IMG/VR virus record: IMGVR_UViG_3300028800_000001
Span: 1-64,000 of that record
DNA length: 64,000 nucleotides
Reading direction: 5' to 3' (one strand)
The position numbers were made by a program, and so were the translations under genes. Positions 7,261 to 61,020 of this stretch are shown here, one piece after another. Within the stretch, counting starts at the first letter, position 1; every line of letters starts with the position of its first letter. The notes below the pieces were generated by a model, which worked only from the letters and a program-made list of their open reading frames with translations, had not been told where the DNA came from and ran no database searches.

Positions 7261-7316
7261 AGTATAGAGTGACAAGAAAGGAAAGTCAAGAATTATTTCT
7301 CTGTATTTTCAGAAAT
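7261..7316 (-). promoter_or_regulatory. class I promoter + palindromic box
   Basis: TTGACT-17-TATACT; box centre 7311, 22 nt from -35. Confidence 0.85.
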
Positions 7317-7490
7317 TGCGCGGTAACAGAGCACGACCGCATAGATGAACAGGGAAGCCATACATACGATTTTCGCTGCCATTTCTGGCAGACCAATCAG
7401 GGCAAGGACGATAAAAAGAAGAAAACAAACAACTACACCAATAACAAGCCTTAAAGCAAAAGTAAACTCTTTCTTATATGCCTGGATCAA
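7293..7490 (-). CDS. small two-TM membrane protein ending ...SENTEK inside the promoter box
   Basis: TTG start overlapping upstream TGA; hydrophobic. Confidence 0.65.
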   Translation of the reverse strand: MIQAYKKEFTFALRLVIGVVVCFLLFIVLALIGLPEMAAKIVCMASLFIYAVVLCYRAISENTEK

Positions 7491-7936
7491 AGTTTTGGTT
7501 CCTCCAACTGTATTGTGCGCCGAATGACATCCCAATTGTGCACTTCGCTGTGCTCTAGGAGCCAATCAAGCTGCTTAGAACTCAAAGATGTCCCTTGCAT
7601 GGTTGACTCCACTTTGTTGTCGCCGCTGACACCGGCATAATACTCGTTTTCACGATACGGAAAGCCCTCTTGAAAGAGCTCACCCAACTTGTGTGGGTTT
7701 CCGTTGGCTTCAACGAGCAACAAATAATAGATCTCAAATTCCGCTTTCGGGTTGAAATCTAGGATCACTTCTTTGACCGCATCTTGCAGCTCGTGCATTG
7801 GCTTATTCTTTGCCAGCCGCATACAAGCAAGTAAGATCTTGCCAGGAGAAGTATGGTAGCGTGACGCAAGCGCACGTATTTCGTAAAGTTGTTCCATATC
7901 ACGAAGTGTGAAGCTTATTTCTGGCCGCTGTTCCAC
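7487..7936 (-). CDS. hypothetical protein
   Basis: 149 aa, RBS. Confidence 0.7.
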   Translation of the reverse strand: MEQRPEISFTLRDMEQLYEIRALASRYHTSPGKILLACMRLAKNKPMHELQDAVKEVILDFNPKAEFEIYYLLLVEANGNPHKLGELFQEGFPYRENEYYAGVSGDNKVESTMQGTSLSSKQLDWLLEHSEVHNWDVIRRTIQLEEPKL

Positions 7937-7950
7937 AATGTCACCTCTTC

Positions 7951-8361
7951 TCAGTCATAGAGTCCCATCTCTTGTGAGATGGCAGCGATTTCAGCAAGAC
8001 CTGTTTCACGTTCCTGCGCACGCCGTTGCTGAAACACCAGAACATCTTCTAATAAGACGCGCCTGTGTGTGCCAACACGAATAAAGGGGATAACACCATT
8101 TTCTAACAGTTTCACTAAGTGCGGCCTGGACATACTTAAAAGATCTGCCACTTGTTGTGTGGTCATTTCCTTTTGTCCAGCGATAAGGGCAACGTAATGC
8201 CCACGCGCTAATTGATGTGCGGCTTCCGCAAGTAAAATGCGCAGTGAAATTGGCAGAGAAACGGTTTGTTCTCCTATTTGCATCTGCGCACTTTCTTGTT
8301 GAAGCAATTTGCGTATGCTCTTGAGCACTTCTTGATCTTGTGGGTCGCCTTGAACAATCAT
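7951..8361 (-). CDS. excisionase-like HTH_17 DNA-binding protein
   Basis: MTTQQVADLLSMSRPHLVKLLENGVIPFIRVGTHRRV. Confidence 0.85.
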   Translation of the reverse strand: MIVQGDPQDQEVLKSIRKLLQQESAQMQIGEQTVSLPISLRILLAEAAHQLARGHYVALIAGQKEMTTQQVADLLSMSRPHLVKLLENGVIPFIRVGTHRRVLLEDVLVFQQRRAQERETGLAEIAAISQEMGLYD

Positions 8362-8426
8362 ATAAGTACACCTTTCTTTTTCTACGAGAAGTATACTATA
8401 TAATCGAAACAAAAGCAATAAGCGAA

Positions 8427-9431
8427 CTATTCGCCACGTGCATGCCAGAGCGCCGGAATGGTTTCCTCTTCGCGCTGGTAATAATCATCGCTGTGTGTTG
8501 AAAAGACATTGAAGGTTTTGACAACTGAAAGGGCTCCCAACTCATCTGAAAGCAGGGAAAGCCAGAGGCCAAGATACCAGTCAGCTTCGGGAACCGCCTG
8601 ATTGCGCACAATGCAAAAGTCTTTTGTGTAGTTGCCGTTCTCGAAGACGCGTAAGCGACGCTCTCTGTTTTTACGCGGATAGTCACGACGCAAACGGTAC
8701 ACGCGTCCTTCAAAACTGTAGCTTGGTACATCTAAGAAGTGATTACGTTCTAGTTGGGCGTAGAGCTCTTCTCCCAGGAACATTTGCAGCGTCGCTTCAG
8801 CGCGCTGTTCTGGTCGCAGACCATCGCCAAGATCGGTCTTTTCCGTCATTCTGATAAATGAGGTGAGCCGTTTCTTCGCTTCTTTTGCGCTCTTTGGCAG
8901 CGTAAAGTGTTCTGGCTGTTGACCGGCCATTGGGAAGCCACCATAGCGTGCGATATCGGCTGCATGAGCGTACCCGCACCATCCAGCAATACGGTCGTAG
9001 ACGCGCTCTATATCGGGGCGTCGATTGGCAAAGCCAATAATACAGCGTGAGGTATCGCCAGTGCCAAGCGTGAGGATCGTCTCCACGAAGAGATAGGTAC
9101 TGCTCTTGAGTGACGCATTGCGACTGGTAATAGCCCAGTCTCCAGCGAGACCACCATGCCAGCGCTCATCCATTTTTTCAGTCACGCCGTGAGGGTCAAT
9201 GACTCTATCGGTGCCTAGACGGAGAAAGTCCTGATGTGTATGCGCACTCGCGTAAAATCGGGTATGAGGACAATTTCGCTCTTCATCGCCACGTTTGAAA
9301 ATCCAGGCCGGACAATCACAAGAAAGATCGCCTGTCGTATTTTCCAACAGGCGATACCAGGAGTCAGGTGAACTGGACGATTCAAAGATGGCGACTAAGC
9401 GATATGCCCCTGATTGCAAACTTGCAGGCAT
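8427..9431 (-). CDS. SWIM Zn-finger-containing protein
   Basis: N-terminal SCDCPAW...CPH (CxC..CxH). Confidence 0.75.
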   Translation of the reverse strand: MPASLQSGAYRLVAIFESSSSPDSWYRLLENTTGDLSCDCPAWIFKRGDEERNCPHTRFYASAHTHQDFLRLGTDRVIDPHGVTEKMDERWHGGLAGDWAITSRNASLKSSTYLFVETILTLGTGDTSRCIIGFANRRPDIERVYDRIAGWCGYAHAADIARYGGFPMAGQQPEHFTLPKSAKEAKKRLTSFIRMTEKTDLGDGLRPEQRAEATLQMFLGEELYAQLERNHFLDVPSYSFEGRVYRLRRDYPRKNRERRLRVFENGNYTKDFCIVRNQAVPEADWYLGLWLSLLSDELGALSVVKTFNVFSTHSDDYYQREEETIPALWHARGE

Positions 9432-9443
9432 AACGCGTCTCCT

Positions 9444-10232: not shown

Positions 10233-10242
10233 TCTTTTCCTT

Positions 10243-14903: not shown

Positions 14904-14959
14904 AGTATACGGCAGCTCTTACCAAAAGACAAGCGTTTCTTCTATGAATATTCAGAAAT
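14904..14959 (-). promoter_or_regulatory. class I promoter + palindromic box
   Basis: TTGTCT-17-TATACT; box centre 14954, 22 nt from -35. Confidence 0.8.
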
Positions 14960-15061
14960 AAAAAAGACAACGCGAAGACGGGAAGGAGGGAATGTGGAAT
15001 TAATTATTTTTTCGTGATGCGGGGGAAATTATTTTTTAAAATTAATTAATTATTTGGAGGC

Positions 15062-18701: not shown

Positions 18702-18757
18702 ATCATAGGCCATTTTCTGAAAAACGTCAAGACTTTTTTCTGTGAATATTCAGAAAG
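18702..18757 (-). promoter_or_regulatory. class I promoter with a second box inside the -35/-10 spacer
   Basis: TTGACG-17-TATGAT; box centre 18752 (22 nt); extra TTTTCTGAAAA at 18713-18723. Confidence 0.8.
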
Positions 18758-22172: not shown

Positions 22173-22229
22173 AGTATATGCGAAAGAAAAGCTTTTTGTC
22201 AATAGTTTCTTCTATTTATTTTCAGAAAG
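22173..22229 (-). promoter_or_regulatory. class I promoter + box
   Basis: TTGACA-18-TATACT; centre 22224 (22 nt). Confidence 0.85.
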
Positions 22230-22679
22230 CAAAGTGATCGCATGTCGCACAACGGTTTGTCGCGTTGAGTCGAAATTCAACCGATAATGCTCTTTGGCGC
22301 GCTCAAGAATGGGAAGCGGGTCAACACCCCAACGGTCAAGCCGATCAAGCATGAGCGAAAGCGCAAGGTATTCTTCGGCTGCGGCCATGTGAATACCCTC
22401 TTGCTCGTCACCATCATTGCTGCGACGAAGATACGAACGCGAATATTCAAAGAGTTGTTGTGCAACCACACTCTTTTCTTTTTCTTCACGCGCTTCTTCG
22501 TCAGGGATGGAAGAGATTTTTCTTGCCATCAGCTCGTCGGTATATTGCTTCAGGAGTGGTCTTGCACTATCGGTGACTGCGAGGCGGAATTCTTCGCCTT
22601 CGCTGGTTTTGAAGATAGCTTCTTGTTCACCTTCCCGATTCGTTTTTACGGTATATTGGACAAATTGGACTTGTTTCAT
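22212..22679 (-). CDS. hypothetical protein ending ...SENK inside the promoter box
   Basis: RBS AAGGAG, 155 aa. Confidence 0.75.
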   Translation of the reverse strand: MKQVQFVQYTVKTNREGEQEAIFKTSEGEEFRLAVTDSARPLLKQYTDELMARKISSIPDEEAREEKEKSVVAQQLFEYSRSYLRRSNDGDEQEGIHMAAAEEYLALSLMLDRLDRWGVDPLPILERAKEHYRLNFDSTRQTVVRHAITLLSENK

Positions 22680-22702
22680 AATTTCTCCTTGGTGTTTAGA
22701 AT

Positions 22703-22737
22703 AAAAAAAAGCGCCCCCCAGATGTATGAGGAGCGCT
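22703..22737 (-). terminator. intrinsic terminator after tRNA-like RNA
   Basis: AGCGCTCCTC/GGGGGGCGCT + T8. Confidence 0.85.
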
Positions 22738-22740
22738 AAC

Positions 22741-22797
22741 TCGGCTAGCGCGGAATTGAACCGCGCATAAGAAGTCTTACCGTTAGACCATAGCCGA
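22741..22797 (-). ncRNA. tRNA-like RNA lacking the anticodon arm
   Basis: TCGGCTA/TAGCCGA acceptor, D-arm GTCT-AACGGTA-AGAC, 7-nt linker, T-arm GCGCGG-TTCAATT-CCGCGC. Confidence 0.8.
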
Positions 22798-22941
22798 ACC
22801 AGAACAGATGTACATGTACCAGAATACCCGCCAAAGAAGTTCTCAAAGTAGCTTTTTCGAGGAGTCTACTCGTCAACGAATACTTCTTTGTGTGTAAAAC
22901 AATGGTTACAGGAGCCGACTGTGTACGTTCGGCTCATCACT

Positions 22942-22997
22942 ACTATAGCAGAAACCTTCGCTCCCTGTCAAGAGTTTCTTCTATTTATTTTCTGAAC
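22942..22997 (-). promoter_or_regulatory. class I promoter driving the non-coding tRNA-like unit
   Basis: TTGACA-18-TATAGT; centre 22993 (22 nt). Confidence 0.8.
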
Positions 22998-25180: not shown

Positions 25181-25236
25181 AGTATAGGCTTTTTTCACAA
25201 GCGCGTCAAGACTTTTTTCTAGTTATTTTCAGAAAG
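25181..25236 (-). promoter_or_regulatory. class I promoter + box
   Basis: TTGACG-17-TATACT; centre 25231 (22 nt). Confidence 0.85.
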
Positions 25237-26061
25237 GAAACGTTTGAGGCGATGAAATACGCCAGGGGAAACAGTCATGTTGTAGTCGGCAGGAAGGTCG
25301 TGCTGGTAGGCACGTTCCTGATATAGCAGGCGCGCAAGAGCATTGTAAACGAAAGCCGCTTCCTCGAAGGTCTCGTAGCTTCCACCGCTAAAAGTGCCAC
25401 CATCAATATGCAGTGCGACGCCGTATTTGGCACCCAGGCGACGAATGCCAGGAGGGAGAATGCGCAGATTGGCGCGGTGGTTATTGAGCTTGTTGCCATC
25501 AATATGACGCACACGCTGATTAAGCCAGAGTGCTTTGCCGCTCATGTGTTCTGCCACTTCGTGATGTAAATAGACATTCCCGTTATCGTTGCCAAGAGCA
25601 CGTGCACCACCATGACGTACACCGCTATACTCTTCGCTGCGAAAAACGAAGCCACGCTTATCCAGATTCCAGTGGTGCAGCGCAAAGATATCGAAGTCTT
25701 GTGCGTCAAGAAGCACTTTCTTGCCGTTATCTAAATAAATACCACTACGATCTGTTTGAAATTCAATCGCGTTTAGTTTAATGACGCCTTTGCGTTTGAG
25801 CGTATGTTGTGGTTTTGAGAGGAGCAAGTTGTCGCGTTCGCAGTTAAGCTGATCGTCATCCAGGTGCAGCACATGATAGTGCTTTCTGCGCAGCAGGCCG
25901 CTACGTTTGGCAATCTCTCTACGCAGCAAGACGTTACGACCTTGAATAGAGGCGACCACATCACCCCTGGTATTTCTCCGCCAGGGGTATGTTTCTATCA
26001 ACGCTGCGTCTTCTTCGCTCACACGCAGCACGCTTTCGTCAGGCAGCAAGAACTCGACCAT
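25219..26061 (-). CDS. HNH homing endonuclease (two HNH repeats, AP2-like C-terminus)
   Basis: HLDDDQLNCERDNL; HIDGNKLNNHRANL; G.YETFEEAAFVYN..A; ends SENN in the box. Confidence 0.85.
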   Translation of the reverse strand: MVEFLLPDESVLRVSEEDAALIETYPWRRNTRGDVVASIQGRNVLLRREIAKRSGLLRRKHYHVLHLDDDQLNCERDNLLLSKPQHTLKRKGVIKLNAIEFQTDRSGIYLDNGKKVLLDAQDFDIFALHHWNLDKRGFVFRSEEYSGVRHGGARALGNDNGNVYLHHEVAEHMSGKALWLNQRVRHIDGNKLNNHRANLRILPPGIRRLGAKYGVALHIDGGTFSGGSYETFEEAAFVYNALARLLYQERAYQHDLPADYNMTVSPGVFHRLKRFLSENN

Positions 26062-29957: not shown

Positions 29958-30012
29958 AGTATAGCGTTTTTCTTCTCAAGAGTCAAAAATCTTCATGGTA
30001 TTTTCTGAAAAA
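29958..30012 (-). promoter_or_regulatory. promoter + box (20-nt spacing variant)
   Basis: TTGACT-17-TATACT; TATTTTCTGAAAA centre 30006. Confidence 0.75.
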
Positions 30013-32451: not shown

Positions 32452-32506
32452 AGTATACCCCGCATCTTGTCTTTTATCAATACTTTCTTCTTTGTATTTT
32501 CAGAAG
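32452..32506 (-). promoter_or_regulatory. class I promoter + box
   Basis: TTGATA-17-TATACT; centre 32502 (22 nt). Confidence 0.8.
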
Positions 32507-32764: not shown

Positions 32765-32809
32765 CTTTTTTCTCCTTGAATTTTGTTTTCGTTTATTTCT
32801 TATACAGGA

Positions 32810-32864
32810 ATGATACCTCATTTGGAAGAAAGCGTCAAGCGTTTTCGCTGTGTATTTTCAGAAA
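32810..32864 (-). promoter_or_regulatory. class I promoter + box
   Basis: TTGACG-17-TATCAT; centre 32860 (22 nt). Confidence 0.8.
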
Positions 32865-33274
32865 TCAAGTGTACTTTCAATACTGGTTAAATCAATAATG
32901 CGTTGTGTCAAATGGTCTTGCGTTTGTTCAAGAGTGCGCAGTAAGATAGTGCGATGCGGCTGCTCAGGAAGATCACGCATGGTTTCCATCACTTCGCGCA
33001 GTTCTTTTTCCAGAGCTTCTCGTTGCAATTGTACGCCACACAGGATATCGCCTTTGGCGCGCCCATAATAGAGTACACTCTTTGGCTCTCTTGAGGTGGT
33101 AAACGACTCCAGTTCAACGCCTAGCACCTGCTCGTAGCCCCTGAGCACTTTCTCCGAAGGCGTTTCTTTGCCGTTCTCGATACCAGAAAGATAGCCTTTG
33201 GTAAATCCTATGCGCCGCGCCATCTCGGTGAGGGAAATCTTTGCGGCTAGCCGCGCTGCACGTAAGTCAATCAT
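32858..33274 (-). CDS. XRE-family HTH regulator
   Basis: LRAARLAAKISLTEMARRIGFTKGYLSGIENGK; TGA stop inside the box. Confidence 0.9.
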   Translation of the reverse strand: MIDLRAARLAAKISLTEMARRIGFTKGYLSGIENGKETPSEKVLRGYEQVLGVELESFTTSREPKSVLYYGRAKGDILCGVQLQREALEKELREVMETMRDLPEQPHRTILLRTLEQTQDHLTQRIIDLTSIESTLDF

Positions 33275-35983: not shown

Positions 35984-36046
35984 AAAAAATGGAGCTATAC
36001 TTAGAAATAGCTCCATCAAACGCTTTCTTCAATGTATTTTCAGAAG
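35984..36046 (-). terminator. terminator hairpin occupying a degenerate class I promoter (box retained)
   Basis: ATGGAGCTAT/ATAGCTCCAT + T6; TATTTTCAGAA centre 36042. Confidence 0.65.
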
Positions 36047-38813: not shown

Positions 38814-39068
38814 CTACTTACTTTTGATGTTCGTAATATAGGTTCCTAGCTGCGCGAGTGCTTCATCGTTTAAAACGATATGTTGACTCACAAAAACCAG
38901 GATATAATAGCTTTGTTCAGGTTTACCAATTTCTTGAAAATGTGTTGTCGTCACATGAGCAATCCAGGCGATCTGCTCTTCATCAAGTACCTGAAAGGTA
39001 TCTTCATCGATGATATATTTGGTGTTGCTTAGAATATAGTTGCGCGACCGCTCAATTTTCGGGTTCAT
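38814..39068 (-). CDS. hypothetical protein
   Basis: 84 aa. Confidence 0.7.
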   Translation of the reverse strand: MNPKIERSRNYILSNTKYIIDEDTFQVLDEEQIAWIAHVTTTHFQEIGKPEQSYYILVFVSQHIVLNDEALAQLGTYITNIKSK

Positions 39069-39094
39069 TGTTTTTCCTTCCTGTAGCCATTGGA

Positions 39095-39532
39095 CTACAA
39101 AGTTTTCTTTCGATTAAGTTTGACACCTTCGTTTGCAATGGGTCTTTTATTGTATCTTTCTGGCAAGTGTGACCCATTTTTATTCACTATCGCGTTTAAG
39201 CAAGGCCCAAGACGATAGATAAGCTCTTCCTCGCATGTTTGGATAAAAACATCGTGCATTGCTATTTGCTCATACTCTTTTGCCGTAATTAATTCTTTAA
39301 GTTCCCATATCTCCATCGTCCAATTAAGAGATTCTGGCATATTGTCAAGAATAATTTGACCAACCCTGTCGGGCCAGGGAAGGCGAGCGCCTTTTCCCAG
39401 GTGTTCAAGTAGTCTGGTATAAGGATGAATAGAGCGCCCAACATAGAAGATAGTATCTTCATCTCTGTAGACATAGAGGCATTGCTCCTCCTCGAATGTT
39501 TCCATTGCTTTGCCAATAGTAGTTTGTATCAT
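39095..39532 (-). CDS. GIY-YIG nuclease family protein
   Basis: CLYVY...FYVGRS...RLLEH...E...P.LN. Confidence 0.8.
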   Translation of the reverse strand: MIQTTIGKAMETFEEEQCLYVYRDEDTIFYVGRSIHPYTRLLEHLGKGARLPWPDRVGQIILDNMPESLNWTMEIWELKELITAKEYEQIAMHDVFIQTCEEELIYRLGPCLNAIVNKNGSHLPERYNKRPIANEGVKLNRKKTL

Positions 39533-40638
39533 TCGTCATCTTCCTCGCTAATAATAACCCCATCGTTTGCGATAGAGCCGCGCTTTGCATAGTAAAGGGG
39601 CATGTGCGGAGTTTTCCAGCCTCCACCACTTTGCACTTTATCAAGCGGCGTGCCATTTTTGAGTGCGTCATAGACCCAAAAGTGTCTGGCATCGTGAGGT
39701 GAGAGATTTTTTACCCCAATTGTTTCTCCAAGAGTACGAACACGGGCATTGATAGCGCGTCTCGTAATGCGTTTGTTTTCGTAGCCCAGGAAAAGTGGCC
39801 CTGCCGTTCTTGGTATTCCAGCGACGCCTTCCTTGAGCATTCCTATATAATTCTCAGCCGCAATACGCGTATGCTTTTTAAGTTTTTGTTTATCGTGAAG
39901 ATTTGTCTTTTCATGATAGATATGCACATTGCCGGTCTGAAGGGAAAAATCTTCAATATTAAGATTGGCAACTTCGCCACAGCGTAATGCATGCTCAAAA
40001 AGCAATCCCGTAAGTAAGGCATCTCTCGCGGCCATTAATTCCTGCTGTTCCTTACTTTGTTTCTTCGGCTGCGTCGTCGCTCTCTTGATTTTAAAAACTT
40101 TTGACGTTTCTATTTCGACCGCATTTTCTTTTTTATTTCCAATGCGTGTTGGCACACCATCAGCGATTCGCTCATGATCACGATTTACTGCGAGCTTTCC
40201 ACTTTTGCCTCGCACCAATTGAATGAGATGTAATTCTTCGAGAGAAAGGAGTCCGGCCTGTTCAACAAGGTTACAATACTTCTTGATCGTGGTGAGGTAG
40301 ACGCAGATCGATCCCATTGCATACCCTTTGTTTTCCAACCAGACCTGAAAGCCAGAAACCAGGGCATCATTTATACCTTCCCAACTTTCAGGAATTTCGT
40401 AGAGTTCTTCTGATGCTCTGCCAACGCCAACAGCATAGAGGTAATTGCTGAAATGAGTCAGATCATTTTTCTGCCGCCTGCGGGTGTTTTCGGTGAGTCC
40501 TTTATGGTATTCGAGAAAGATATTGCTTGCCCTTGCTTTTCTGGCAGCGTTTCCAGCGCGATACAAATCGTCAGGATACAGTTGATCTGAAACACTGGTA
40601 TCCGTGACAAAGATAGTGATCGCCTTTTCTTCTTCCAT
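39529..40638 (-). CDS. tyrosine recombinase/integrase
   Basis: ALRCGEVA.L, K, SPHDARH, GGW, LYY (R-K-H-R-W-Y catalytic set). Confidence 0.92.
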   Translation of the reverse strand: MEEEKAITIFVTDTSVSDQLYPDDLYRAGNAARKARASNIFLEYHKGLTENTRRRQKNDLTHFSNYLYAVGVGRASEELYEIPESWEGINDALVSGFQVWLENKGYAMGSICVYLTTIKKYCNLVEQAGLLSLEELHLIQLVRGKSGKLAVNRDHERIADGVPTRIGNKKENAVEIETSKVFKIKRATTQPKKQSKEQQELMAARDALLTGLLFEHALRCGEVANLNIEDFSLQTGNVHIYHEKTNLHDKQKLKKHTRIAAENYIGMLKEGVAGIPRTAGPLFLGYENKRITRRAINARVRTLGETIGVKNLSPHDARHFWVYDALKNGTPLDKVQSGGGWKTPHMPLYYAKRGSIANDGVIISEEDDE

Positions 40639-40706
40639 TAAGTTTGTTTCCTTTGAAATTTTCTATTTCCGATTTGTATCCATAATCGGCACTGGTTTAT
40701 ACGACC

Positions 40707-40761
40707 ATTATAGAACATTCTTTCTTTGCCGTCAAGGGTTATTTCTTGGTATATTCAGAAG
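40707..40761 (-). promoter_or_regulatory. class I promoter driving integrase
   Basis: TTGACG-17-TATAAT; centre 40757 (22 nt). Confidence 0.85.
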
Positions 40762-40824
40762 ATGGCTGCGCAGGCCGATGTATGATATACTGGTCGCTAC
40801 TTTATTGAATTGAAAGGGAAAATT

Positions 40825-41187
40825 ATGAACACGCCTGATATCATTGCCCTTTGCCAACTCATATTATCTGCTCTTGTTGCTCTTATTGGTGGAACTCTAG
40901 CAATAGCTGCTTATCTCAGAGTTCTCAAAACCACAGACGAAAATACCAGGGCTAGAAAAGAAGAGATAGGAAAAGACATTGAAATAAGAAAGAACGAATT
41001 AAAACAGGCCGGTGATCAACTACAACAATTAATGACTTCCAGTGGACAGCAATGGGAAGCTAGTATTAAAAGAGATAAATACGCTGTCGCCGGACTTATG
41101 ATTTTAGCGATCTGCTTTTTACTAATATCAGAAAACAAAATATCCAAAATATCAAACGAAATTCGAGGTCAAAAACGTGGAGAATGA
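40825..41187 (+). CDS. membrane protein with coiled coil
   Basis: Two TM segments, AT-rich. Confidence 0.7.
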   Translation: MNTPDIIALCQLILSALVALIGGTLAIAAYLRVLKTTDENTRARKEEIGKDIEIRKNELKQAGDQLQQLMTSSGQQWEASIKRDKYAVAGLMILAICFLLISENKISKISNEIRGQKRGE

Positions 41188-41217
41188 TTTTTCATTCTTT
41201 TGACGATGGACTTGGCA

Positions 41218-41248
41218 CCGCAAGTGTTTTTCTATGCATATTCAGAAG
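41218..41248 (-). promoter_or_regulatory. decayed class I promoter copy
   Basis: caagtgtttttctatgcatattcagaa resembles 14930-14957; -35/-10 degenerate. Confidence 0.5.
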
Positions 41249-41379
41249 GCAAGGTCAAAGGCCAGCCGGAACATATGTTCGATAGCCAAAAATATTTTGG
41301 GGCTTCTGCATCTGCCGTCAACGAGTTAGAATGCAGGAGCATCATTGTAGAACCTAGTCTGTTTTAGAAGGAGTCGCTC

Positions 41380-41685
41380 ATGATAAATGAGTACGCCCTG
41401 TTTTTTCGCGATAAAAATGGTAACATCTGTGGTGGTCAAAGCCACGACAAAGCGAATTTTTTAACCTCTGGAATAGTTGATGACAAGGCAGTCTTAGCCA
41501 TAGAACTATCCGTTCTAAAAAGATATCTTGAAGGAAATATCCCAAATGGCGCTCATAGCGTAGAGATACATAAGATGCTTCCTGAAGAAACGCTCTCTCA
41601 ACTAATTGAGAGAATTAATGTTGACCATTTAAAACCAATCACTTCGATCAATAAAAGCGATCTAAATTTGGAGGAAGCAAAATGA
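41380..41685 (+). CDS. hypothetical protein
   Basis: RBS AAGGAG. Confidence 0.7.
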   Translation: MINEYALFFRDKNGNICGGQSHDKANFLTSGIVDDKAVLAIELSVLKRYLEGNIPNGAHSVEIHKMLPEETLSQLIERINVDHLKPITSINKSDLNLEEAK

Positions 41686-42146
41686 AGAGACTTTGCTATA
41701 TAAAGCACGAAGGCATAATTCATATAGGTGTAGATACAAAACATCCCAACCCATTTTGGTCTTACGGAGATGGGACAAAAAAATGTTGCGATACCAAGAT
41801 TATCGGCGCTTACGAGCATGGACTACTATCTCTTGATAGGATTTTCTCTTCGAGAGAACTTTGCCAAGATTGCAACAAAAGTTGGAACGATGTGGATTTC
41901 TTAATAGAGTGCGAGCCCACGCCTGTTTTTGAACTATGGCGCGGCGACAAGCACCTAGTTGATTTCTCTACTGAAGAATTAAAAGAGATGATCAATAAAG
42001 ATACTGATTTACCAATGGAGCTGGTAACGCATGGATATCATCAACAAGTTCCCTTCATTGGCAGGCATATTGTTTTTGAAACTCTTGCAGAAACAATAGA
42101 AGGAATTAAAACAGAGATTGCCAATAGAGAGCAAGCGAAAAGTTAA
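41682..42146 (+). CDS. hypothetical protein
   Basis: RBS GGAGG, ATGA overlap. Confidence 0.7.
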   Translation: MKRLCYIKHEGIIHIGVDTKHPNPFWSYGDGTKKCCDTKIIGAYEHGLLSLDRIFSSRELCQDCNKSWNDVDFLIECEPTPVFELWRGDKHLVDFSTEELKEMINKDTDLPMELVTHGYHQQVPFIGRHIVFETLAETIEGIKTEIANREQAKS

Positions 42147-42212
42147 GCTTGACAGACGTGATATGCTCCAGATTATCACAAGGTCGAAAATTTTCAGAAA
42201 GGATAAAAGCCA

Positions 42213-42311
42213 ATGGAACTTTTCGCCCGAATAATCGGCACCACAATTGGTGGCATTGTTGGTACTTGGATTACCAACGAGATCATTAAAAATTGGAGAA
42301 AGAATAAATAA
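42213..42311 (+). CDS. 32-aa hydrophobic peptide, type I toxin-like (not in ORF track)
   Basis: RBS AAAGGA; MELFARIIGTTIGGIVGTWITNEIIKNWRKNK; terminator follows. Confidence 0.6.
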   Translation: MELFARIIGTTIGGIVGTWITNEIIKNWRKNK

Positions 42312-42330
42312 CGCTCCAATTCTAAAGGCA

Positions 42331-42371
42331 ATAAAAGCACCTTGAATTTTGATCAAGGTGCTTTTATTTTT
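42331..42371 (+). terminator. intrinsic terminator
   Basis: AAAAGCACCTTGA/TCAAGGTGCTTTT. Confidence 0.8.
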
Positions 42372-42382
42372 GGAGGAATTTT

Positions 42383-42904
42383 ATGAAAAAATCTTTCTTT
42401 TTGTTTATGCTGTTATTTTTGTCAGCTTGCGGTTCAGCCGCTCCTTCTAATAGCGCCGCTACCAAAATAGCGCCCACTGCAACGCCGCAAGTTGTCTTTT
42501 ATGGCACTGTCGGAAAGCCAATTATTATGATCCCTTGGAAGATATCGCTCGAATCAGTAAAAATAATTGATCCGGCAACCATTCCGCAACACGATCAAAT
42601 ATTTCCATCCGTTACTGCCAATCAGCATTTTCTTCTTCTGAATGAGCATATAGAAAATATCTCAAATTCTTCTGCAAATGTTGGAGGGATGCAGTTTGCG
42701 TTGCAAAATACGAATGGAGATAGTTTTTCTGAGCAATTGGGGCTTCCTGGCATTGACTCGTCAGGTCTTGGAGGAACAATGGCACCTTCGATACAGCAGG
42801 CCGGACAGCAAGTTTACATTGTGCCAACCAGCGAGCATTCTTTTCTCTGGATCTATACCGCAGACGATAACTTGCATCAAATCATTTGGAAGTTTAGTGC
42901 GTAG
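42383..42904 (+). CDS. lipoprotein, DUF4352-like Ig fold
   Basis: Lipobox LSAC; ENIS...F.LQN.NG..F. Confidence 0.75.
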   Translation: MKKSFFLFMLLFLSACGSAAPSNSAATKIAPTATPQVVFYGTVGKPIIMIPWKISLESVKIIDPATIPQHDQIFPSVTANQHFLLLNEHIENISNSSANVGGMQFALQNTNGDSFSEQLGLPGIDSSGLGGTMAPSIQQAGQQVYIVPTSEHSFLWIYTADDNLHQIIWKFSA

Positions 42905-42910
42905 TGCAAC

Positions 42911-42946
42911 AAAAAAGAGAGACGCTATGCTGTGGCGTCTCTCTTT
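42911..42946. terminator. bidirectional terminator
   Basis: AAAGAGAGACGC/GCGTCTCTCTTT. Confidence 0.8.
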
Positions 42947-42969
42947 AGGCAATGCGGTATGACTCGCTT

Positions 42970-43012
42970 ATTCTAGCACGCCCCTGCCGTAGCAGTCAAG
43001 CATTTTCAGAAG
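42970..43012 (-). promoter_or_regulatory. class II promoter (box 9 nt from -35)
   Basis: TTGACT-18-TAGAAT; centre 43008. Confidence 0.7.
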
Positions 43013-43346
43013 AAACTTGGTATCCCAGCGTAAAGGGAAAAACTGCTTCTTGAATATCAACCTGAGCATCATCCGTCTTAGACTCAACGACAGGAGTAAG
43101 GCCATCTAACCGAAGGGTACACGTGAAATCTCTTGCCTCGTAGAGCACATGAACTCTTTCGTAACGGCCAAACACGAATACTGAGATATACGTTCCGTCT
43201 TCCTGGCTCGTAACTGCTGGCGTTGCCATGACGCCAGTTGTCGAAAGACACATGACTTTAAAGTAGTCATCCGACTCAACTAGACAAATGCAATATGATG
43301 TTAACTTCCCCTGAGTGTTATTGGTATATTTTATGCTGTATCGCAT
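42996..43346 (-). CDS. hypothetical protein flanked by direct promoter repeats, ends SSENA
   Basis: RBS AAAGGG; TGA stop is within the TTGACT -35. Confidence 0.7.
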   Translation of the reverse strand: MRYSIKYTNNTQGKLTSYCICLVESDDYFKVMCLSTTGVMATPAVTSQEDGTYISVFVFGRYERVHVLYEARDFTCTLRLDGLTPVVESKTDDAQVDIQEAVFPFTLGYQVSSENA

Positions 43347-43390
43347 AGCTATTCCCTTTCTTTTGTTTACTATTAAATTTTAAGATAACA

Positions 43391-43428
43391 GAAAAGCGAG
43401 ATACCGTACCCCGAATATCTCGCTTTTC
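43391..43428. terminator. terminator-like hairpin
   Basis: GAAAAGCGAGATA/TATCTCGCTTTTC. Confidence 0.65.
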
Positions 43429-43459
43429 CTTGTGTTCACCGAAACACTACAACGTTATT

Positions 43460-43501
43460 ATTCTAGCACGTGCTCTCAAAACAGTCAAGTATTTTCAGAA
43501 G
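43460..43501 (-). promoter_or_regulatory. class II promoter (box 9 nt from -35)
   Basis: TTGACT-17-TAGAAT; centre 43497. Confidence 0.7.
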
Positions 43502-43898
43502 ACGGCCAAACGTAGGGAAGATTTGGGTCAACCCCCCAGCCATATTGCCCGTACCACTCTGGATTTTTACGCAATAAGTTGGACTGATGTGAAGCGTGAA
43601 AATAGTAATTTCCCAACCAGGGCGGGAGTGTATACTTAGTAATTTCTGGATAGAGCACCATCGTATTCTTATACCGCTCTTTGCTTATCCACTCTTTTAT
43701 CATCGCATTGACATACTGGCTGAGCGCTTCCTCGTACCCTTTCCACATCTTGACCGCAGGATGATGTTGCCACCCTGTACTCTTGCCTGTAAGCGTGTTT
43801 AAAATTTGCATTCCCTCAACACGTTGCTTCCCAAGTCGTTTCGAGTCCAGGCAATGAGCAGACTCCGTAAAGCTTGCATAGGGCAAAAATGTTTGCAT
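43485..43898 (-). CDS. pyrimidine-dimer DNA glycosylase-like (MSMEG_6728/Pyr_excise family)
   Basis: MQTFLP...LDSKRLGKQRVE..QIL...GWQHHPAVKMW.GY; ends SSENT. Confidence 0.85.
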   Translation of the reverse strand: MQTFLPYASFTESAHCLDSKRLGKQRVEGMQILNTLTGKSTGWQHHPAVKMWKGYEEALSQYVNAMIKEWISKERYKNTMVLYPEITKYTLPPWLGNYYFHASHQSNLLRKNPEWYGQYGWGVDPNLPYVWPSSENT

Positions 43899-44128
43899 TA
43901 CACATTCCGCCAGAGAATAGGCAGCGCTGCAATAAATTCTTCGCTGTACTCAGGGGCAAACTCGGCTCGCAGGTGAACTGGAAGCTCGTTGGCACAGATC
44001 AGGCCATCAAACCAGAGCCCAACAATGATGATATCTGCGTCTTCCTGGTTCATCGGGGTACCGTCTGAATTCAGAATATAGGTAATTCCCTGTGCGTCGT
44101 TATGAATGGTGTATTTTTCGTCTATCAT
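43898..44128 (-). CDS. hypothetical protein
   Basis: RBS AAGGAG. Confidence 0.7.
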   Translation of the reverse strand: MIDEKYTIHNDAQGITYILNSDGTPMNQEDADIIIVGLWFDGLICANELPVHLRAEFAPEYSEEFIAALPILWRNV

Positions 44129-44160
44129 TTTCTTTTCTCCTTGAAATATTTTCTACCCTA

Positions 44161-44216
44161 ATTGTGCCTCAATCGCACCGTTCCGTCAAGCCTTTTTTCA
44201 CTGTATATTCAGAAAG
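44161..44216 (-). promoter_or_regulatory. class I promoter + box
   Basis: TTGACG-17-CACAAT; centre 44211 (22 nt). Confidence 0.75.
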
Positions 44217-44911: not shown

Positions 44912-45511
44912 ATGCAAAATTATCCGCCACCACCGCCCTATGGCGGTCAACCGTTTCAACCCGCGCCACAACCAAAGCAAAACTTCTGGAAACGCCAGAG
45001 TAGAGCTGGAAAAATTGGCATTATCGCGGCGTGTATCATCCTTCCATTGTCGCTGTGCATTTGTGTAAACGTAGTCAACAGCTCAGGTGGTAAGTCTCCT
45101 GCTGCGGTTATTACCGATACCCCTGCTGCAACTTCTCAGCAGCAAACAACGCCAGCGCCAACGGAAAAGCCCACTGCTATCCCTCCAACGGCTACGCCAA
45201 CACCTGTGCCAACCTGGAAAACAATACAGTCATTTAGTGGGGATGGCAATCAAAATACAGCTATCTTTTCTGCTCCCGATGATTGGAAGATTAGTTATAC
45301 CTGTACCGCTAGTGATGGAATGGGTATTGGAGGTCTTTTTTATGTGACTGTTTACGGTTCCGATAATTCTTTGATCGATGATCCTGTAAGTGCAGATTGT
45401 AAAGACGGTCAAACAACCAATGGAGTTTCTGAAGAGCATCAGTCAGGCCAAGTATATCTCAAAATAATCTCCGGTATTCCTTGGACTGTTCAAATTCAAG
45501 CCTTGCAATAG
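44912..45511 (+). CDS. membrane-anchored Pro/Thr-rich protein with C-terminal beta domain
   Basis: Pro-rich N-terminus, TM, PT linker. Confidence 0.8.
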   Translation: MQNYPPPPPYGGQPFQPAPQPKQNFWKRQSRAGKIGIIAACIILPLSLCICVNVVNSSGGKSPAAVITDTPAATSQQQTTPAPTEKPTAIPPTATPTPVPTWKTIQSFSGDGNQNTAIFSAPDDWKISYTCTASDGMGIGGLFYVTVYGSDNSLIDDPVSADCKDGQTTNGVSEEHQSGQVYLKIISGIPWTVQIQALQ

Positions 45512-54074: not shown

Positions 54075-54132
54075 AGTATAGCCGAGAATGAGGAAGAAGA
54101 CAAGTATTTCTTCTCTGTATTTTCAGAAAATA
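54075..54132 (-). promoter_or_regulatory. class I promoter with perfect 15-bp palindrome TATTTTCAGAAAATA
   Basis: TTGTCT-17-TATACT; centre 54125 (22 nt). Confidence 0.85.
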
Positions 54133-58930: not shown

Positions 58931-58965
58931 ATGCAGTCCACACTAATCCCGCGTCCACACAAAAC

Positions 58966-59382: not shown

Positions 59383-59699
59383 AGTCGCACCCGCGTTTTG
59401 AGGTCTTCGAACTCCTCTTGTGTGAGCTTCCAGAATTCTTTTACTGAAATTTCTCCAGTGAGCGCATATTGCGCTTCTAACCGCTCAACGAGCGTCCCTT
59501 GTGGCGCATCATCCATAAGCAGAATTGCAACAAAGTTCTTCGCCTCTTCAAGAAGACCATTGCGCAGCGCATCATCTTCTTGTGAATTTATGTATTTTTC
59601 ACGATAGGCTGTTGCCATGCGAAAGAACTGCATCGCTCGAAACTGGCTTTTCTCTGGTAGCGATTTTATCGTTCTGTAGACGCTCAGGTAATTATCCAT
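59379..59699 (-). CDS. hypothetical protein
   Basis: RBS GGGAG before MDNYLS. Confidence 0.7.
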   Translation of the reverse strand: MDNYLSVYRTIKSLPEKSQFRAMQFFRMATAYREKYINSQEDDALRNGLLEEAKNFVAILLMDDAPQGTLVERLEAQYALTGEISVKEFWKLTQEEFEDLKTRVRL

Positions 59700-59997
59700 T
59701 GTGATGCTCCCAGGTTGGTTCATCGGTACTGCCGATTTGTGCTTCGGCATGATTGTATACGTCACGTGCAAAGTGGAGGCAGCCAAGTTGTGCAAGCGTT
59801 GCTTCCAAGACAGAAGCGCTTTGCGCAAAGTACCCACTCGTGAAGCGGCTCGTTTTACTGGCCTCTTCGCCTGTTGGGTCTTGTTTTAGTGACTCTCTCA
59901 GTGACTTGAGGCGCTCTTCTAATGCGTTAATACTGCCGAGCAGCGTATGATTGGCTTGATCGAGATTGCGATCAAGATCGTTATTGGGATCAAACAT
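59692..59997 (-). CDS. coiled-coil hypothetical protein
   Basis: 101 aa. Confidence 0.7.
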   Translation of the reverse strand: MFDPNNDLDRNLDQANHTLLGSINALEERLKSLRESLKQDPTGEEASKTSRFTSGYFAQSASVLEATLAQLGCLHFARDVYNHAEAQIGSTDEPTWEHHNG

Positions 59998-60286
59998 GTT
60001 CTTTGTCTCTTTCTATAACTGACTGCATATTGGAGAGATAGCCGCCACAAAAACCAAGCAGGGCGACCTCAGAGGCGTCTGGCTGGCTTTCTGCTCTGGC
60101 GCACGCCATCAAGGCTTCCTGATCGAAAATCCAGGCGTGATCTTTGGCGTATTCATTGGCGAAGAAGTGATAGCCGTTAATAACGCCCCATATAAACTCC
60201 TCGTTTTCCTCTTCGCTGCGAGCGCACGCGGCCTCTGTGAGTCCAATCCTTGCCAGAAACGCTGGCACCCATTTTGGAGTGTTCAT
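59990..60286 (-). CDS. hypothetical protein
   Basis: ATGA overlap. Confidence 0.65.
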   Translation of the reverse strand: MNTPKWVPAFLARIGLTEAACARSEEENEEFIWGVINGYHFFANEYAKDHAWIFDQEALMACARAESQPDASEVALLGFCGGYLSNMQSVIERDKEHV

Positions 60287-60591
60287 GCGCGCACCCACAT
60301 TCCCTGCTCGTCGGTACTCCAACCAGCAGTCTGTACTACTTCGCAGGCTTCTTGTAGAAAGCGTTGCTGCTCCTGGCGTACGACGCTGTCGTACTGCGCA
60401 GGCGTAATCTTTTTGATGTATTGTTTCCCACCGTTATAGCCGTAGGTTACTGTATGCTCTTCGCTGCGCATGGTCGTTAAAACCGCACGAAAACGGTTGT
60501 CACCGATGCTCTCCAGGGAAAACTGAAATAGAGCGTGGCGTGTCTCTTCGGAAAGACGAGGCTTTTGCGGGGTAAAATTAGCATAATCCAT
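60283..60591 (-). CDS. hypothetical protein
   Basis: First gene after promoter. Confidence 0.7.
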   Translation of the reverse strand: MDYANFTPQKPRLSEETRHALFQFSLESIGDNRFRAVLTTMRSEEHTVTYGYNGGKQYIKKITPAQYDSVVRQEQQRFLQEACEVVQTAGWSTDEQGMWVRA

Positions 60592-60627
60592 TGACGTTCT
60601 CACTTTCACTTTTTTGTCTACAAACGA

Positions 60628-60682
60628 AGTATAGCGCAGGAACGTGAGAACGTCAACGATTTTTTCACTGTATTTTCAGAAC
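60628..60682 (-). promoter_or_regulatory. class I promoter + box
   Basis: TTGACG-17-TATACT; centre 60678 (22 nt). Confidence 0.85.
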
Positions 60683-61020
60683 TCAGTAGGAAGCTTCTGA
60701 CTATATTTTTCTAACCAGAGGATAATGGAGGCCAGAGTACGTTGTTTCTCAGAGATGGCATCCGCGCCTTTTGTATGGAACTTATAGAGCATCAAGGTGC
60801 GCTTGCCGCGCTGTACTACTGGTGGCTCTTGCGCGGTTTCTGCTAAGGTTTCGGCTGAAAAAATTTCACTGCACTCTTTAACAAATGCTTTGTCATCCAT
60901 GCCGTAGATTTCTTCCATGAGCGTTTCGATTTCACGCATTCTCCCACGTTGATAGCGTTCTAACCACGCAAGTTCTTCGTGCAGGGCTTCAACGGCCTGA
61001 TGTAACGCTCTCATCTCCAT
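60676..61020 (-). CDS. helical hypothetical protein; TGA stop inside the box
   Basis: 114 aa. Confidence 0.7.
   Translation of the reverse strand: MEMRALHQAVEALHEELAWLERYQRGRMREIETLMEEIYGMDDKAFVKECSEIFSAETLAETAQEPPVVQRGKRTLMLYKFHTKGADAISEKQRTLASIILWLEKYSQKLPTEF

What the first reader, a model, noticed from the sequence alone, without database searches (positions are those of the whole stretch)
7293..61020. Upstream genes end inside the promoter box: evidence for promoter-mediated cassette shuffling
Seen: unrelated proteins end with residues encoded by the box itself: SENTEK (7293), SENK (22212), SENN (25219), SSENA (42996), SSENT (43485), DF* (32858) and EF* (60676), the last two with TGA in the palindrome. 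Others stop within a few nt of it (22997, 32510, 36049). Inference: gene modules were joined by recombination at the box, so the promoter sequence supplies their C-termini. This resembles promoter-repeat-mediated shuffling described for T4-like early regions. The tyrosine recombinase at 39529, itself under a box promoter, could act on this palindrome.
Basis: partly seen in the sequence, partly recalled or inferred. Interest (0 to 1): 0.65.

Follow-up and report, generated by a model that had tools for sequence, protein, structure and literature searches.

The report
Repeated phage promoter overlapping gene ends
A 327-kb soil jumbo phage reuses one about 60-bp strong promoter some 54 times, packed so tightly that it overlaps and terminates the preceding genes, and in natural variants these promoter copies sit at the borders of swapped gene blocks, much like the promoter cassettes already described in T4-like phages.

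Summary
On the minus strand the box reads TTCTGAAAATAcAgaGAAaaAa..CTTGAC, then 17 nt, then TATACT. It is a sigma-70-type promoter with a two-A-tract, UP-like element at -60 to -38. The 327,295-bp phage genome carries about 54 copies, 17 of them in the window.

All seven cited C-termini are box-coded. Genome-wide, 22 of 54 boxes hold the stop of an upstream ORF of at least 60 aa. The box closes frame 1 at TTC TGA, frame 3 at the TGA of TTGAC, and frame 2 at variable TAG/TAA positions.

The box-coded tails are dispensable. The DenV-like family ends at ...VWP, just before the box, and an HNH domain ends one residue before it.

The recombination idea is partly supported. Independent assemblies from other rhizosphere samples lack DenV, and there the upstream gene ends in the same box in another frame. 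Other variants are 96-98% identical up to box 44214 and unrelated beyond it. An 85-nt box block is the only homology between three unrelated integrase modules.

Several breakpoints are not at boxes, and strain contigs over 15-38 kb are fully collinear. The integrase is swapped cargo, and the "palindrome" is only TTC-N-GAA. The closest known system is the PeSL cassettes of T4-type phages.

The parts
1173..1226 (-). Box promoter (UP-like element, -35 TTGACG, 17 nt, -10 TATACT).
7261..7314 (-). Box promoter. Its GAAATAA variant supplies the TAA stop of the gene ending at 7293.
7293..7565 (-). ORF of up to 90 aa ending ...ISENTEK*, with 6 residues and the stop coded by the box.
14904..14957 (-). 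Box promoter of the TTCTGAATATTCATAG / TTGTCT sub-type.
18702..18755 (-). Box promoter, with a terminator hairpin and T-run just upstream.
22173..22227 (-). Box promoter. The TAG at box position 14-16 stops the gene ending at 22212.
22212..22679 (-). 155-aa ORFan ending ...LLSENK*. No homologs were found beyond identical copies in other samples.
22942..22996 (-). Box promoter (TTCAGAAAAT variant). A TAG of an about 27-aa hydrophobic ORF (22997-23080) abuts it.
25181..25234 (-). Box promoter. Its TAG stops the HNH gene.
25219..26061 (-). 280-aa HNH_3 endonuclease gene ending ...FLSENN*.
29958..30009 (-). Box variant with the upstream element 23 nt before -35.
32452..32505 (-). Box promoter whose -10 lies in a hairpin followed by a T-run. 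The upstream gene 32510-32821 stops 7 nt before it.
32810..32863 (-). Box promoter followed by the conserved leader family. TTC TGA ends the HTH gene.
32858..33274 (-). 138-aa HTH_3 regulator ending ...TLDF*. Its 45%-identical ortholog in relative L073 aligns to the second-to-last residues and has its own TGA 3 nt before that phage's box.
35984..36045 (-). Box upstream element with a degenerate -35 (TTTGAT) and a hairpin plus T-run. The gene 36049-36300 stops 4 nt before it. In relative L073 a different gene (homolog of 30385-30855) sits in that slot.
38829..44214 (.). Hypervariable island bounded on the right by box 44214. Other samples carry alternative contents here: unrelated integrases, a GmrSD-like gene, and DenV present or absent.
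39529..40638 (-). Tyrosine recombinase, 369 aa (motifs ALRCGE, HDARH, LYY). It is driven by box 40760 and lies inside the swapped module.
40707..40760 (-). Box promoter of the integrase. Together with about 25 nt upstream it forms an 85-nt block that is the only homology between three unrelated integrase modules.
42970..43011 (-). Short box (element 12 nt before -35, TGn-extended -10 TAGAAT) followed by a terminator hairpin (42910-42945). The TGA of TTGACT stops the 116-aa gene.
42996..43346 (-). 116-aa ORFan ending ...VSSENA*. It is absent from variant L056.
43460..43500 (-). Short box followed by a leader hairpin (43390-43429). The TGA of TTGACT stops DenV. The block 43389-43499 is 89% conserved in L056 while both flanks differ.
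43485..43898 (-). DenV-like pyrimidine-dimer glycosylase (Pyr_excise), 137 aa. The family's conserved part ends at W131-P132, and the tail SSENT* is box-coded. The gene is a presence/absence indel (43500-43909).
43898..44128 (-). 76-aa gene. It ends ...ILWRNV* here (TAATG overlap with DenV) and ...ILWYSI* on the box TGA in the DenV-less variant.
44161..44214 (-). Box promoter at a strain-level mosaic boundary. Sequence is 96-98% identical upstream in four variant contigs and unrelated downstream in three of them.
54075..54128 (-). Box promoter of the TTGTCT sub-type.
60628..60681 (-). Box promoter. TTC TGA ends the gene ending at 60676. The arrangement is conserved in an 86%-identical relative (L041).
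60676..61047 (-). ORF of about 115-123 aa ending ...LPTEF*.

Best explanation
The box is the standard strong early promoter of an uncultivated 327-kb rhizosphere jumbo phage. It has a host sigma-70/sigma-A type core (-35 TTGAC, 17 nt, -10 TATACT). Upstream lies a conserved element with two A-tracts 11 bp apart (cTGAAAATa at about -58 to -50 and GAGAAAAAA at about -47 to -39). This is the position and phasing of an UP element contacted by the two RNA polymerase alpha C-terminal domains. A short form keeps only one tract, moved to the proximal position.

Because genes are packed almost without spacers, the upstream element is laid over the last codons of the preceding gene. The box carries a stop in frame 1 (TTC TGA) and frame 3 (TGA of TTGAC). 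Its less constrained positions carry TAG or TAA in frame 2 where an ORF enters in that frame. Any ORF running in is therefore closed after 1-9 codons. The box-coded residues are dispensable tails, not functional C-termini.

A second inference is less certain. The 60-120-nt box regions (promoter, sometimes with leader or hairpin) are the only patches of homology between otherwise unrelated gene blocks. They may therefore serve as crossover points for homologous recombination, possibly by the phage's own RecA-family protein, as PeSL cassettes are proposed to do in T4-type phages.

Shown here: the motif, its copy number and fixed geometry, the overlaps, the non-conservation of the tails, and the natural variants with breakpoints in or at boxes. 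Inferred: promoter activity, alpha-CTD contact, early timing, and that the box causes rather than merely marks the exchanges.
For: Motif and geometry:
- Counts far exceed chance, with fixed 25-nt spacing to -35 and 17-nt spacers.
- The box promoters are the top hits of an independent promoter scan.
- The same box occurs in relatives whose proteins are only 35-73% identical (L026; L029, L030 and L043; L073). This argues for functional constraint.
- UP elements have two subsites, with critical adenines at -41 to -43 (PMC4390567).

Overlap:
- In 22 of 54 boxes an ORF of at least 60 aa stops inside the box.
- Box variants carrying a frame-2 stop go with ORFs entering in frame 2 (12/26 against 2/26, Fisher p = 0.004).

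Dispensable tails:
- The DenV family alignment ends at VWP.
- The HNH domain of 187605-188438 ends at residue 276 of 277.
- The HTH ortholog in L073 aligns to the second-to-last residues and uses its own stop.

Exchange at boxes:
- The DenV indel ends exactly at the 5' edge of box 43500, and the upstream gene then stops in that box.
- In L057, L058 and L059, three assemblies from three samples, homology breaks inside box 44214.
- An 85-nt box block is shared by three unrelated integrase modules.
- The block of box 43500 plus its leader is conserved while both flanks differ.
- In L073 a different gene occupies the slot just upstream of the box equivalent to 36045.
- 37 of 54 boxes share an exact match of at least 20 nt with another box, up to 42 nt.
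- The phage has a RecA-family gene at 134961-135731.
Against: - There is no transcript or binding data. The conserved G/C positions (TTCTG, CAG) are not part of the UP consensus, so a specific factor could bind there instead.
- The partner breakpoints of the indels are at gene starts or leaders rather than boxes (43910, 39118, 38829, 36300/30855). Simple box-to-box exchange therefore does not explain them.
- Breakpoints at gene borders are expected anyway, because selection removes recombinants that break genes.
- Strain contigs over 15.2-38.5 kb show no rearrangement at nine boxes, though at 99.5-100% identity they have little power.
- All structural variation seen at strain level is in one island that also carries integrases.
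- The frame bias of ORFs ending in the box (16:4:2, p = 4e-4) is not explained. It is not due to avoidance of TGA.
- Two of the four joints rest on short contigs.
Confidence: 0.65

Rival explanations
1. Pure compaction. The box is only a promoter, and gene blocks are exchanged by illegitimate or micro-homology recombination anywhere. Only recombinants with intact genes and promoters survive, so breakpoints pile up at gene borders, where the boxes happen to sit. The box has no role in recombination.
For: The other ends of the same indels lie at gene starts or leaders (43910, 39118, 38829, 36300/30855). Contigs through nine boxes are collinear. Stop-bearing box variants track the frame of the upstream ORF, which suggests long local co-adaptation.
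Against: The break in variants L057-L059 lies inside the box, between the shared upstream element or -35 and the spacer, not beside it. Box-only homology islands of 85-110 nt lie between unrelated flanks. Exact matches of 20-42 nt are shared between boxes, and the phage has a RecA-family gene.
Confidence: 0.28
2. The upstream element TTCTGAAAAT is a site for a sequence-specific phage or host regulator rather than a generic UP element. Candidates are an activator at class I or class II positions, or a repressor that silences about 54 promoters in a lysogen, as with the oriented operator/stoperator sites of cluster A mycobacteriophages. This does not exclude either recombination view.
For: Non-A/T positions are conserved across relatives with 35-70% protein identity. 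The element occurs at two discrete distances from -35 (25 and 12 nt). The phage encodes HTH regulators and an integrase, which hints at a temperate lifestyle. Oriented repeated sites in short intergenic spaces are known (PMC9283540).
Against: The element is never found apart from a -35/-10 except in a few degenerate copies. Its two A-tracts fit the UP subsite positions. No candidate binding protein was identified.
Confidence: 0.25
3. One reading: the tyrosine recombinase at 39529-40638 performs site-specific recombination at the box palindrome and so shuffles cassettes, in the manner of an integron.
For: The gene is a tyrosine recombinase with the catalytic motifs present. It is driven by a box and lies in the most variable part of the window.
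Against: The inverted repeat is TTC-N-GAA, 3+3 nt with a 1-nt centre. Known core sites have longer arms around a 6-8-bp overlap region (my knowledge of the family). The integrase is itself replaced by two unrelated integrases behind the same box block, and one weaker short-contig joint may lack it altogether. It is the only integrase in the genome, against 54 boxes. Breakpoints are not at a fixed position in the box.
Confidence: 0.03

Closest known systems
PeSL (promoter-early stem-loop) cassettes of T4-type phages (Arbiol et al. 2010, PMC2839356; Comeau et al. 2014, PMC4122927)
   Same: [quoted passage not shown] Most sit in front of small ORFan genes. Indels and replacements between related phages border on them. 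Conservation extends over about 100 bp, and they are proposed as homologous-recombination sites.
   Different: The phage is not T4-type: it has a DnaE-type polymerase at most 31% identical to any GenBank phage. A stem-loop is not a general part of the box; only the two short boxes, a few others and about 10 upstream terminators have one. The conserved part is a specific 22-nt upstream element. Mini-circles were not testable.
UP-element promoters (rrnB P1 type, with proximal and distal alpha-CTD subsites)
   Same: The position is -60 to -38. There are two A-tracts one helical turn apart, with adenines around -41 to -43. The single-tract short form matches a promoter that has only the proximal subsite (PMC4390567).
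   Different: Strongly conserved G and C positions lie outside the A/T consensus. No binding or activity data exist, and the host is unknown.
Operator/stoperator sites of cluster A mycobacteriophages (PMC9283540)
   Same: A short asymmetric motif occurs more than 20 times, lies in short intergenic spaces and is oriented with transcription.
   Different: Those are repressor sites that block initiation or elongation. Here the motif is locked at a fixed distance to a -35/-10 and looks like part of the promoter.
Integron cassettes (IntI tyrosine recombinase with attC sites)
   Different: There are no attC-like imperfect palindromes. The integrase is variable cargo and is not conserved. The cassettes have their own promoters rather than sharing one Pc. 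The comparison rests on my knowledge of integrons.
Mosaic module boundaries at gene borders in tailed phages (Hendrix-type mosaicism; short conserved linker sequences)
   Same: Sharp transitions occur from near-identity to no similarity at gene borders.
   Different: Here a defined repeated regulatory sequence sits at many of the transitions. The comparison is from my own knowledge and was not checked in a paper.

Membership tests
PeSL cassettes (T4-type phages) | A repeated sigma-70-like -35/-10 promoter, tens of copies per genome. | tested here: met
   54 copies with TTGAC, 17 nt and TATACT, and they are the top hits of the consensus scan.
PeSL cassettes (T4-type phages) | An AT-rich region upstream of -35 that contains the stop codon of the upstream gene. 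| tested here: met
   22 of 54 boxes have the stop inside the upstream element and 5 more have it 4-7 nt before. Compare the figure 2 legend of PMC2839356.
PeSL cassettes (T4-type phages) | A stem-loop (terminator or attenuator) as a constituent of the cassette. | tested here: not met
   The best hairpin near boxes is no stronger than at random genome positions (median -10.8 against -12.1 kcal/mol). Only a subset has one: short boxes 43500 and 43011, boxes 32505 and 36045, and about 10 with an upstream terminator.
PeSL cassettes (T4-type phages) | Indels and replacements between related phages are bordered by the cassette. | tested here: inconclusive
   True for DenV, box 44214, the 85-nt box 40760 block and the slot before box 36045. 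The partner breakpoints are not at boxes, and there are too few relatives for a statistical test.
PeSL cassettes (T4-type phages) | Box-to-box recombination products (mini-circles) can be detected. | not testable with these tools
   Only assembled contigs of the runs were available, not raw reads.
PeSL cassettes (T4-type phages) | The phage belongs to the T4 superfamily. | tested here: not met
   The polymerase is DnaE-like and at most 31% identical to any GenBank phage. There was no Gp23 match, but that control was uninformative.
UP element (alpha-CTD site) | A/T-rich tracts at -59 to -38, with proximal adenines near -41 to -43. | tested here: inconclusive
   Two A-tracts lie at the right positions, but there are extra conserved G/C positions. 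Concept from PMC4390567.
UP element (alpha-CTD site) | Stimulation of transcription through the alpha C-terminal domain. | not testable with these tools
   This needs in vitro transcription or reporter assays, and the host is unknown.
Tyrosine-recombinase site-specific system acting on the box | A recombinase of the family with catalytic residues. | tested here: met
   Pfam Phage_integrase 1.6e-19. It aligns with XerC/XerA structures, and the motifs ALRCGE, HDARH and LYY are present.
Tyrosine-recombinase site-specific system acting on the box | A core site with inverted arms around a 6-8-bp overlap region, and a fixed crossover position. | tested here: not met
   Only TTC-N-GAA is present. Breakpoints fall at different positions: the 5' edge, after -35, and after -10.
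Tyrosine-recombinase site-specific system acting on the box | The recombinase is conserved together with its sites. | tested here: not met
   Relatives carry unrelated integrases of 342 and 304 aa behind the same box block, and one weaker short-contig joint may have none. There is a single integrase for 54 boxes.
Pyr_excise / DenV-like glycosylase (gene 43485-43898) | Match to the family model and to full-length homologs. | tested here: met
   Pfam 4.3e-23. There are thousands of homologs at 55-73% identity, and conservation ends at W131-P132.

The most novel reading that the evidence does not exclude
The box is more than a promoter. It would be a plug-in socket whose upstream half holds stop codons for every reading frame and doubles as a homology patch. 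Any incoming ORF can then be captured directly in front of it by the phage's RecA-type recombinase without needing its own stop or terminator. On this reading, cassette exchange at these sockets, including whole integrase and defence (GmrSD-like) modules, is going on now in rhizosphere populations of a non-T4 jumbo phage. The strong bias for the SEN reading frame would then reflect selection on how genes are docked.
Probability: 0.2. Interest if true: 0.65.

Novelty: new variant of a known kind. Interest (0 to 1): 0.45.

Why it matters
This would extend promoter-cassette-linked modular shuffling, so far described for T4-type phages, to an unrelated, uncultivated soil jumbo phage. Support comes from natural variants in independent metagenome assemblies. 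It also gives a ready promoter model for annotating this phage group: about 54 early transcription units, plus a candidate second promoter class. It explains odd shared C-terminal peptides (SEN...) as harmless overlap products rather than a motif. Finally, it points to a 5-kb hot spot where integrases, a DNA-repair gene and a GmrSD-like restriction gene are swapped, which bears on how large phages acquire defence and lysogeny functions.

Tried and rejected
Searches that found no useful relatives:
- Megablast of 14 kb against GenBank phages found no match.
- The exact 19-mer box in IMG/VR hit only fragments of the same phage plus a chance hit, L010. The looser box pattern in IMG/VR gave the same two fragments.
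- The box pattern in 185,579 prokaryote genomes gave one chance hit with no -10 and no shared genes, L060. The metagenome hit L040 also shares nothing else.
- A DNA-polymerase-based search for relatives in IMG/VR found none.
- The word search for the 155-aa (SENK) and 280-aa HNH (SENN) proteins found no informative homologs, so their C-termini could not be compared.
- DenV against PDB sequences gave no hit at 1e-3.
- Rfam over the window found nothing.
- The big representative-protein search was not run, because no claim here rests on absence of relatives.

Ideas tested and dropped:
- Strain contigs L049-L055 and L063-L070 were checked for rearrangements at boxes. All are collinear at 99.5-100% identity.
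- The idea that hairpins are a general part of the box was rejected.
- The idea that the frame bias comes from avoidance of TGA stops was rejected: stop usage is TAA 169, TGA 120, TAG 86.
- The record's 'direct terminal repeats' are only a 127-bp assembly overlap, and contig L033 runs across the junction. The window start is therefore not a physical end.

Other:
- One mistaken family-scan call failed on a too-short input.
- Joints (a) 39118/40707 and (b) 43011/44271 rest on short contigs and are treated as weaker evidence.

Full report
**What the window is.** It is the first 64 kb of a 327,295-bp IMG/VR virus record. The record's 'terminal repeat' is only a 127-bp assembly overlap. A contig from another sample runs across the junction (L033), so the genome is circular or circularly permuted. 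Runs that hold it are rhizosphere metagenomes. Nearly all genes in the window are small and lie on the minus strand. The DNA polymerase is DnaE-like and at most 31% identical to any GenBank phage. The phage is therefore an orphan jumbo phage and not a T4 relative. It has a tape-measure protein, a helicase, a RecA-family gene, one integrase and a cluster of 11 tRNA genes.

**The box.** On the minus strand the repeat reads TTCTGAAAATAcAgaGAAaaAa..CTTGAC, then 17 nt, then TATACT.
- The 10-mer occurs 31 times in the window with at most one mismatch, against 8.9 expected.
- The exact 11-mer occurs 35 times in the genome, 31 on the minus strand, against 0 for the reversed control.
- A weight matrix finds 49 sites and none in shuffled sequence.
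- With a looser definition there are 54 boxes with a -35 and -10 at fixed geometry, 16 of them in the window. A 17th window copy, at 36045, has a degenerate -35.
- A generic promoter scan puts the box promoters at the top of its list for 30-46 kb.

The upstream element spans about -60 to -38. It contains two A-tracts 11 bp apart, which matches the layout of the distal and proximal UP-element subsites (PMC4390567). Two copies, 43500 and 43011, are a short form. They keep one tract directly before -35, have a TGn-extended -10, and carry a strong hairpin downstream. The same box is present in related phage contigs whose proteins are only 35-73% identical to ours. The element is therefore under functional constraint and is not merely a recent repeat.

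**The observation.** All cited C-termini are as described, with three corrections given in the observation check.
- Frame 1 of the box closes at TTC TGA.
- Frame 3 closes at the TGA of TTGAC.
- Frame 2 (TCT GAA AAT = S-E-N) closes at TAG or TAA at less constrained positions.

Genome-wide, 22 of 54 boxes contain the stop of an ORF of at least 60 aa. Five more have it 4-7 nt before the box. The rest have it 20-90 nt before, often with a terminator hairpin and T-run in between. Box variants that carry a frame-2 stop are the ones entered by frame-2 ORFs (Fisher p = 0.004). Frame 2 is over-represented among ORFs ending in the box (16:4:2, p = 4e-4). I cannot explain that bias. It is not avoidance of TGA stops.

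**Are the box-coded residues real C-termini?** They are not.
- The DenV-like protein has thousands of homologs. The alignment is conserved to ...LPYVWP (residue 132), after which tails of 0-25 residues vary freely. In our gene the box starts one codon later.
- An HNH domain outside the window ends at residue 276 of 277, and the final F and the stop come from the box.
- The HTH protein's ortholog in relative L073 aligns to the second-to-last residues and uses its own TGA 3 nt before that phage's box.

The tails are by-products of overlap. Plain compaction predicts the same pattern.

**Evidence on recombination.** Contigs of four rhizosphere runs were laid on 39-45 kb and showed four joints. Two of them were recovered as full contigs from independent assemblies.
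- In L056 (ENA), DenV is missing exactly from 43909 to 43500. The 76-aa upstream gene, 95% identical to ours, then ends ...YSI* on the TGA of the same box instead of ...RNV*.
- In L057 (Logan), L058 (JGI) and L059 (ENA), sequence is 96-98% identical from 45064 down to box 44214. Downstream, similarity ends inside the box. These variants have the short form there, followed by a convergent operon with a GmrSD-like gene.
- An 85-nt block, box 40760 plus 25 nt, is the only similarity between three modules that carry unrelated integrases of 369, 342 and 304 aa.
- The block of box 43500 plus its leader hairpin is 89% conserved in L056, while both flanks differ.
- In the more distant relative L073, gene order is broadly the same. 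However, the slot just upstream of the box equivalent to 36045 holds a different gene, whose homolog in our phage lies 5.5 kb away. The genes just downstream of both L073 boxes also differ.
- Boxes share exact matches of 20-42 nt with other boxes in 37 of 54 cases.

**Evidence against a simple box-to-box mechanism.**
- The other end of each indel is at a gene start, leader or gene end, not at a box (43910, 39118, 38829, and the 36300/30855 junction).
- Contigs from several samples covering 15.2-38.5 kb are 99.5-100% identical and collinear through nine boxes.
- All strain-level structural variation found lies in one 5-kb island that also holds integrases, HTH genes and defence-type cargo. This may be a lysogeny or moron region with its own dynamics.
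- With so few relatives I could not test whether breakpoints prefer boxes over other intergenic DNA.

**The integrase.** It is a tyrosine recombinase with the expected motifs, and it is driven by a box. The box's inverted repeat is only TTC-N-GAA, and breakpoints fall at different positions in the box. The integrase is itself part of the exchanged material: two unrelated integrases replace it in other variants, and one weaker short-contig joint may lack it altogether. It is the only integrase for 54 boxes. I rate this part of the interpretation as very unlikely.

**Comparison with known systems.** The closest is the PeSL cassette of T4-type phages. That system has about 50 strong sigma-70-like early promoters per genome, with an AT-rich upstream region holding the stop codons of upstream genes. 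It is concentrated before ORFans and borders the indels between close relatives. It is proposed, with mini-circle evidence, to mediate shuffling by homologous recombination over about 100 bp (PMC2839356; PMC4122927). Our box shares the promoter, the stop-codon overlap, the setting and the indel association. It lacks the stem-loop as a general component, and the phage is unrelated. I therefore file it as a new variant of a known kind, not as a member. The oriented stoperator sites of cluster A mycobacteriophages (PMC9283540) are a looser parallel and motivate the rival in which a regulator binds the element.

**Verdict.**
- The promoter-overlap explanation is well supported.
- Promoter-linked modular exchange is plausible and has real but limited support.
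- The integrase mechanism is not supported.

Noticed in passing
window 15000-15054 (-); genome 76347, 90693, 104734, 140534, 190921, 220989, 250582, 264388, 275189, 289189, 302951: A second repeated motif, TAATTAATTTTAAAAAA, about 20 nt, then AAAAATAATTAATT, has at least 12 copies just upstream of ribosome-binding sites. In four places it is fused to the -10 of a box. It is a candidate second (middle or late) promoter class.
   Followed up: partly
window 32766-32810 (-) and 10 other genome sites: Eleven boxes share a conserved 5' leader (GTATAAGAAATAAACGAAAAC..TTCAAGGAGAA) running to the start codon. This makes repeats of about 110-120 nt that share up to 42 nt of exact identity.
   Followed up: partly
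window 43375-43500 (-) and 42900-43011 (-): The two short-box promoters are followed by strong hairpins (-27.3 and -21.5 kcal/mol, z about -4.5), one with a U-run. These promoter-plus-terminator units could make RNAs of about 55-70 nt or act as attenuators. There was no Rfam match.
   Followed up: partly
window 38829-44214; loci L056, L058, L059: This is a hypervariable island. Three unrelated integrases occur at the same place, and the cargo differs between samples. Cargo includes a 440-aa GmrSD_N (type IV restriction-like) gene with a small HTH gene in L058/L059. Together with the integrase, this hints at a temperate or moron-type region in a jumbo phage.
   Followed up: partly
window 44249-44629 (+): A 126-aa gene diverges from box 44214. 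TATACT lies 7 nt before its ATG and there is no ribosome-binding site, so the mRNA may be leaderless as for some repressor genes. Some variants are 134 aa.
   Followed up: no
genome 198773-199489 (-) (L018:18773-19489): A 238-aa ADP-ribosyltransferase (ADPrib_exo_Tox/ART families) whose ORF also ends inside a box. T4 Alt/Mod enzymes of this type modify the RNA polymerase alpha C-terminal domain (my knowledge), which would tie in with an UP-type promoter.
   Followed up: no
genome-wide; window boxes 7314, 22227, 25234, 43011, 43500: ORFs that end inside the box strongly prefer the frame reading S-E-N (16 against 4 and 2, p = 4e-4). Stop-codon usage does not explain this, and it remains unexplained.
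   Followed up: partly
window 22680-23080 (-): A 27-aa hydrophobic ORF (22997-23080) overlaps the stop of the preceding gene. After box 22996 comes an unusually long leader of about 250 nt with a hairpin, before the 155-aa gene.
   Followed up: no
L059:4334-4933; genome 44912-45511 and 181411-181635: A 199-aa gene in a variant is chimeric. Its N-terminal part resembles the window gene 44912-45511, and its C-terminal part resembles a gene at 181 kb. This shows recombination inside genes as well.
   Followed up: no
window 41188-41379, copy at 41247 (-); also 42199 (-): Degenerate box copies without a usable -35/-10 lie antisense between plus-strand genes. They may be relics of earlier arrangements.
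   Followed up: no
genome 206435-215344 (L019): A cluster of 11 tRNA genes on the minus strand is interspersed with boxes at 205299, 209892 and 216170.
   Followed up: no
L026 (JGI contig, 15.7 kb): A distant relative carries the same box twice. Upstream it has a block of ParB-methyltransferase, PAPS-reductase/DUF3440 and TAGT (DpdA-like) genes, which suggests a DNA-modification system.
   Followed up: no
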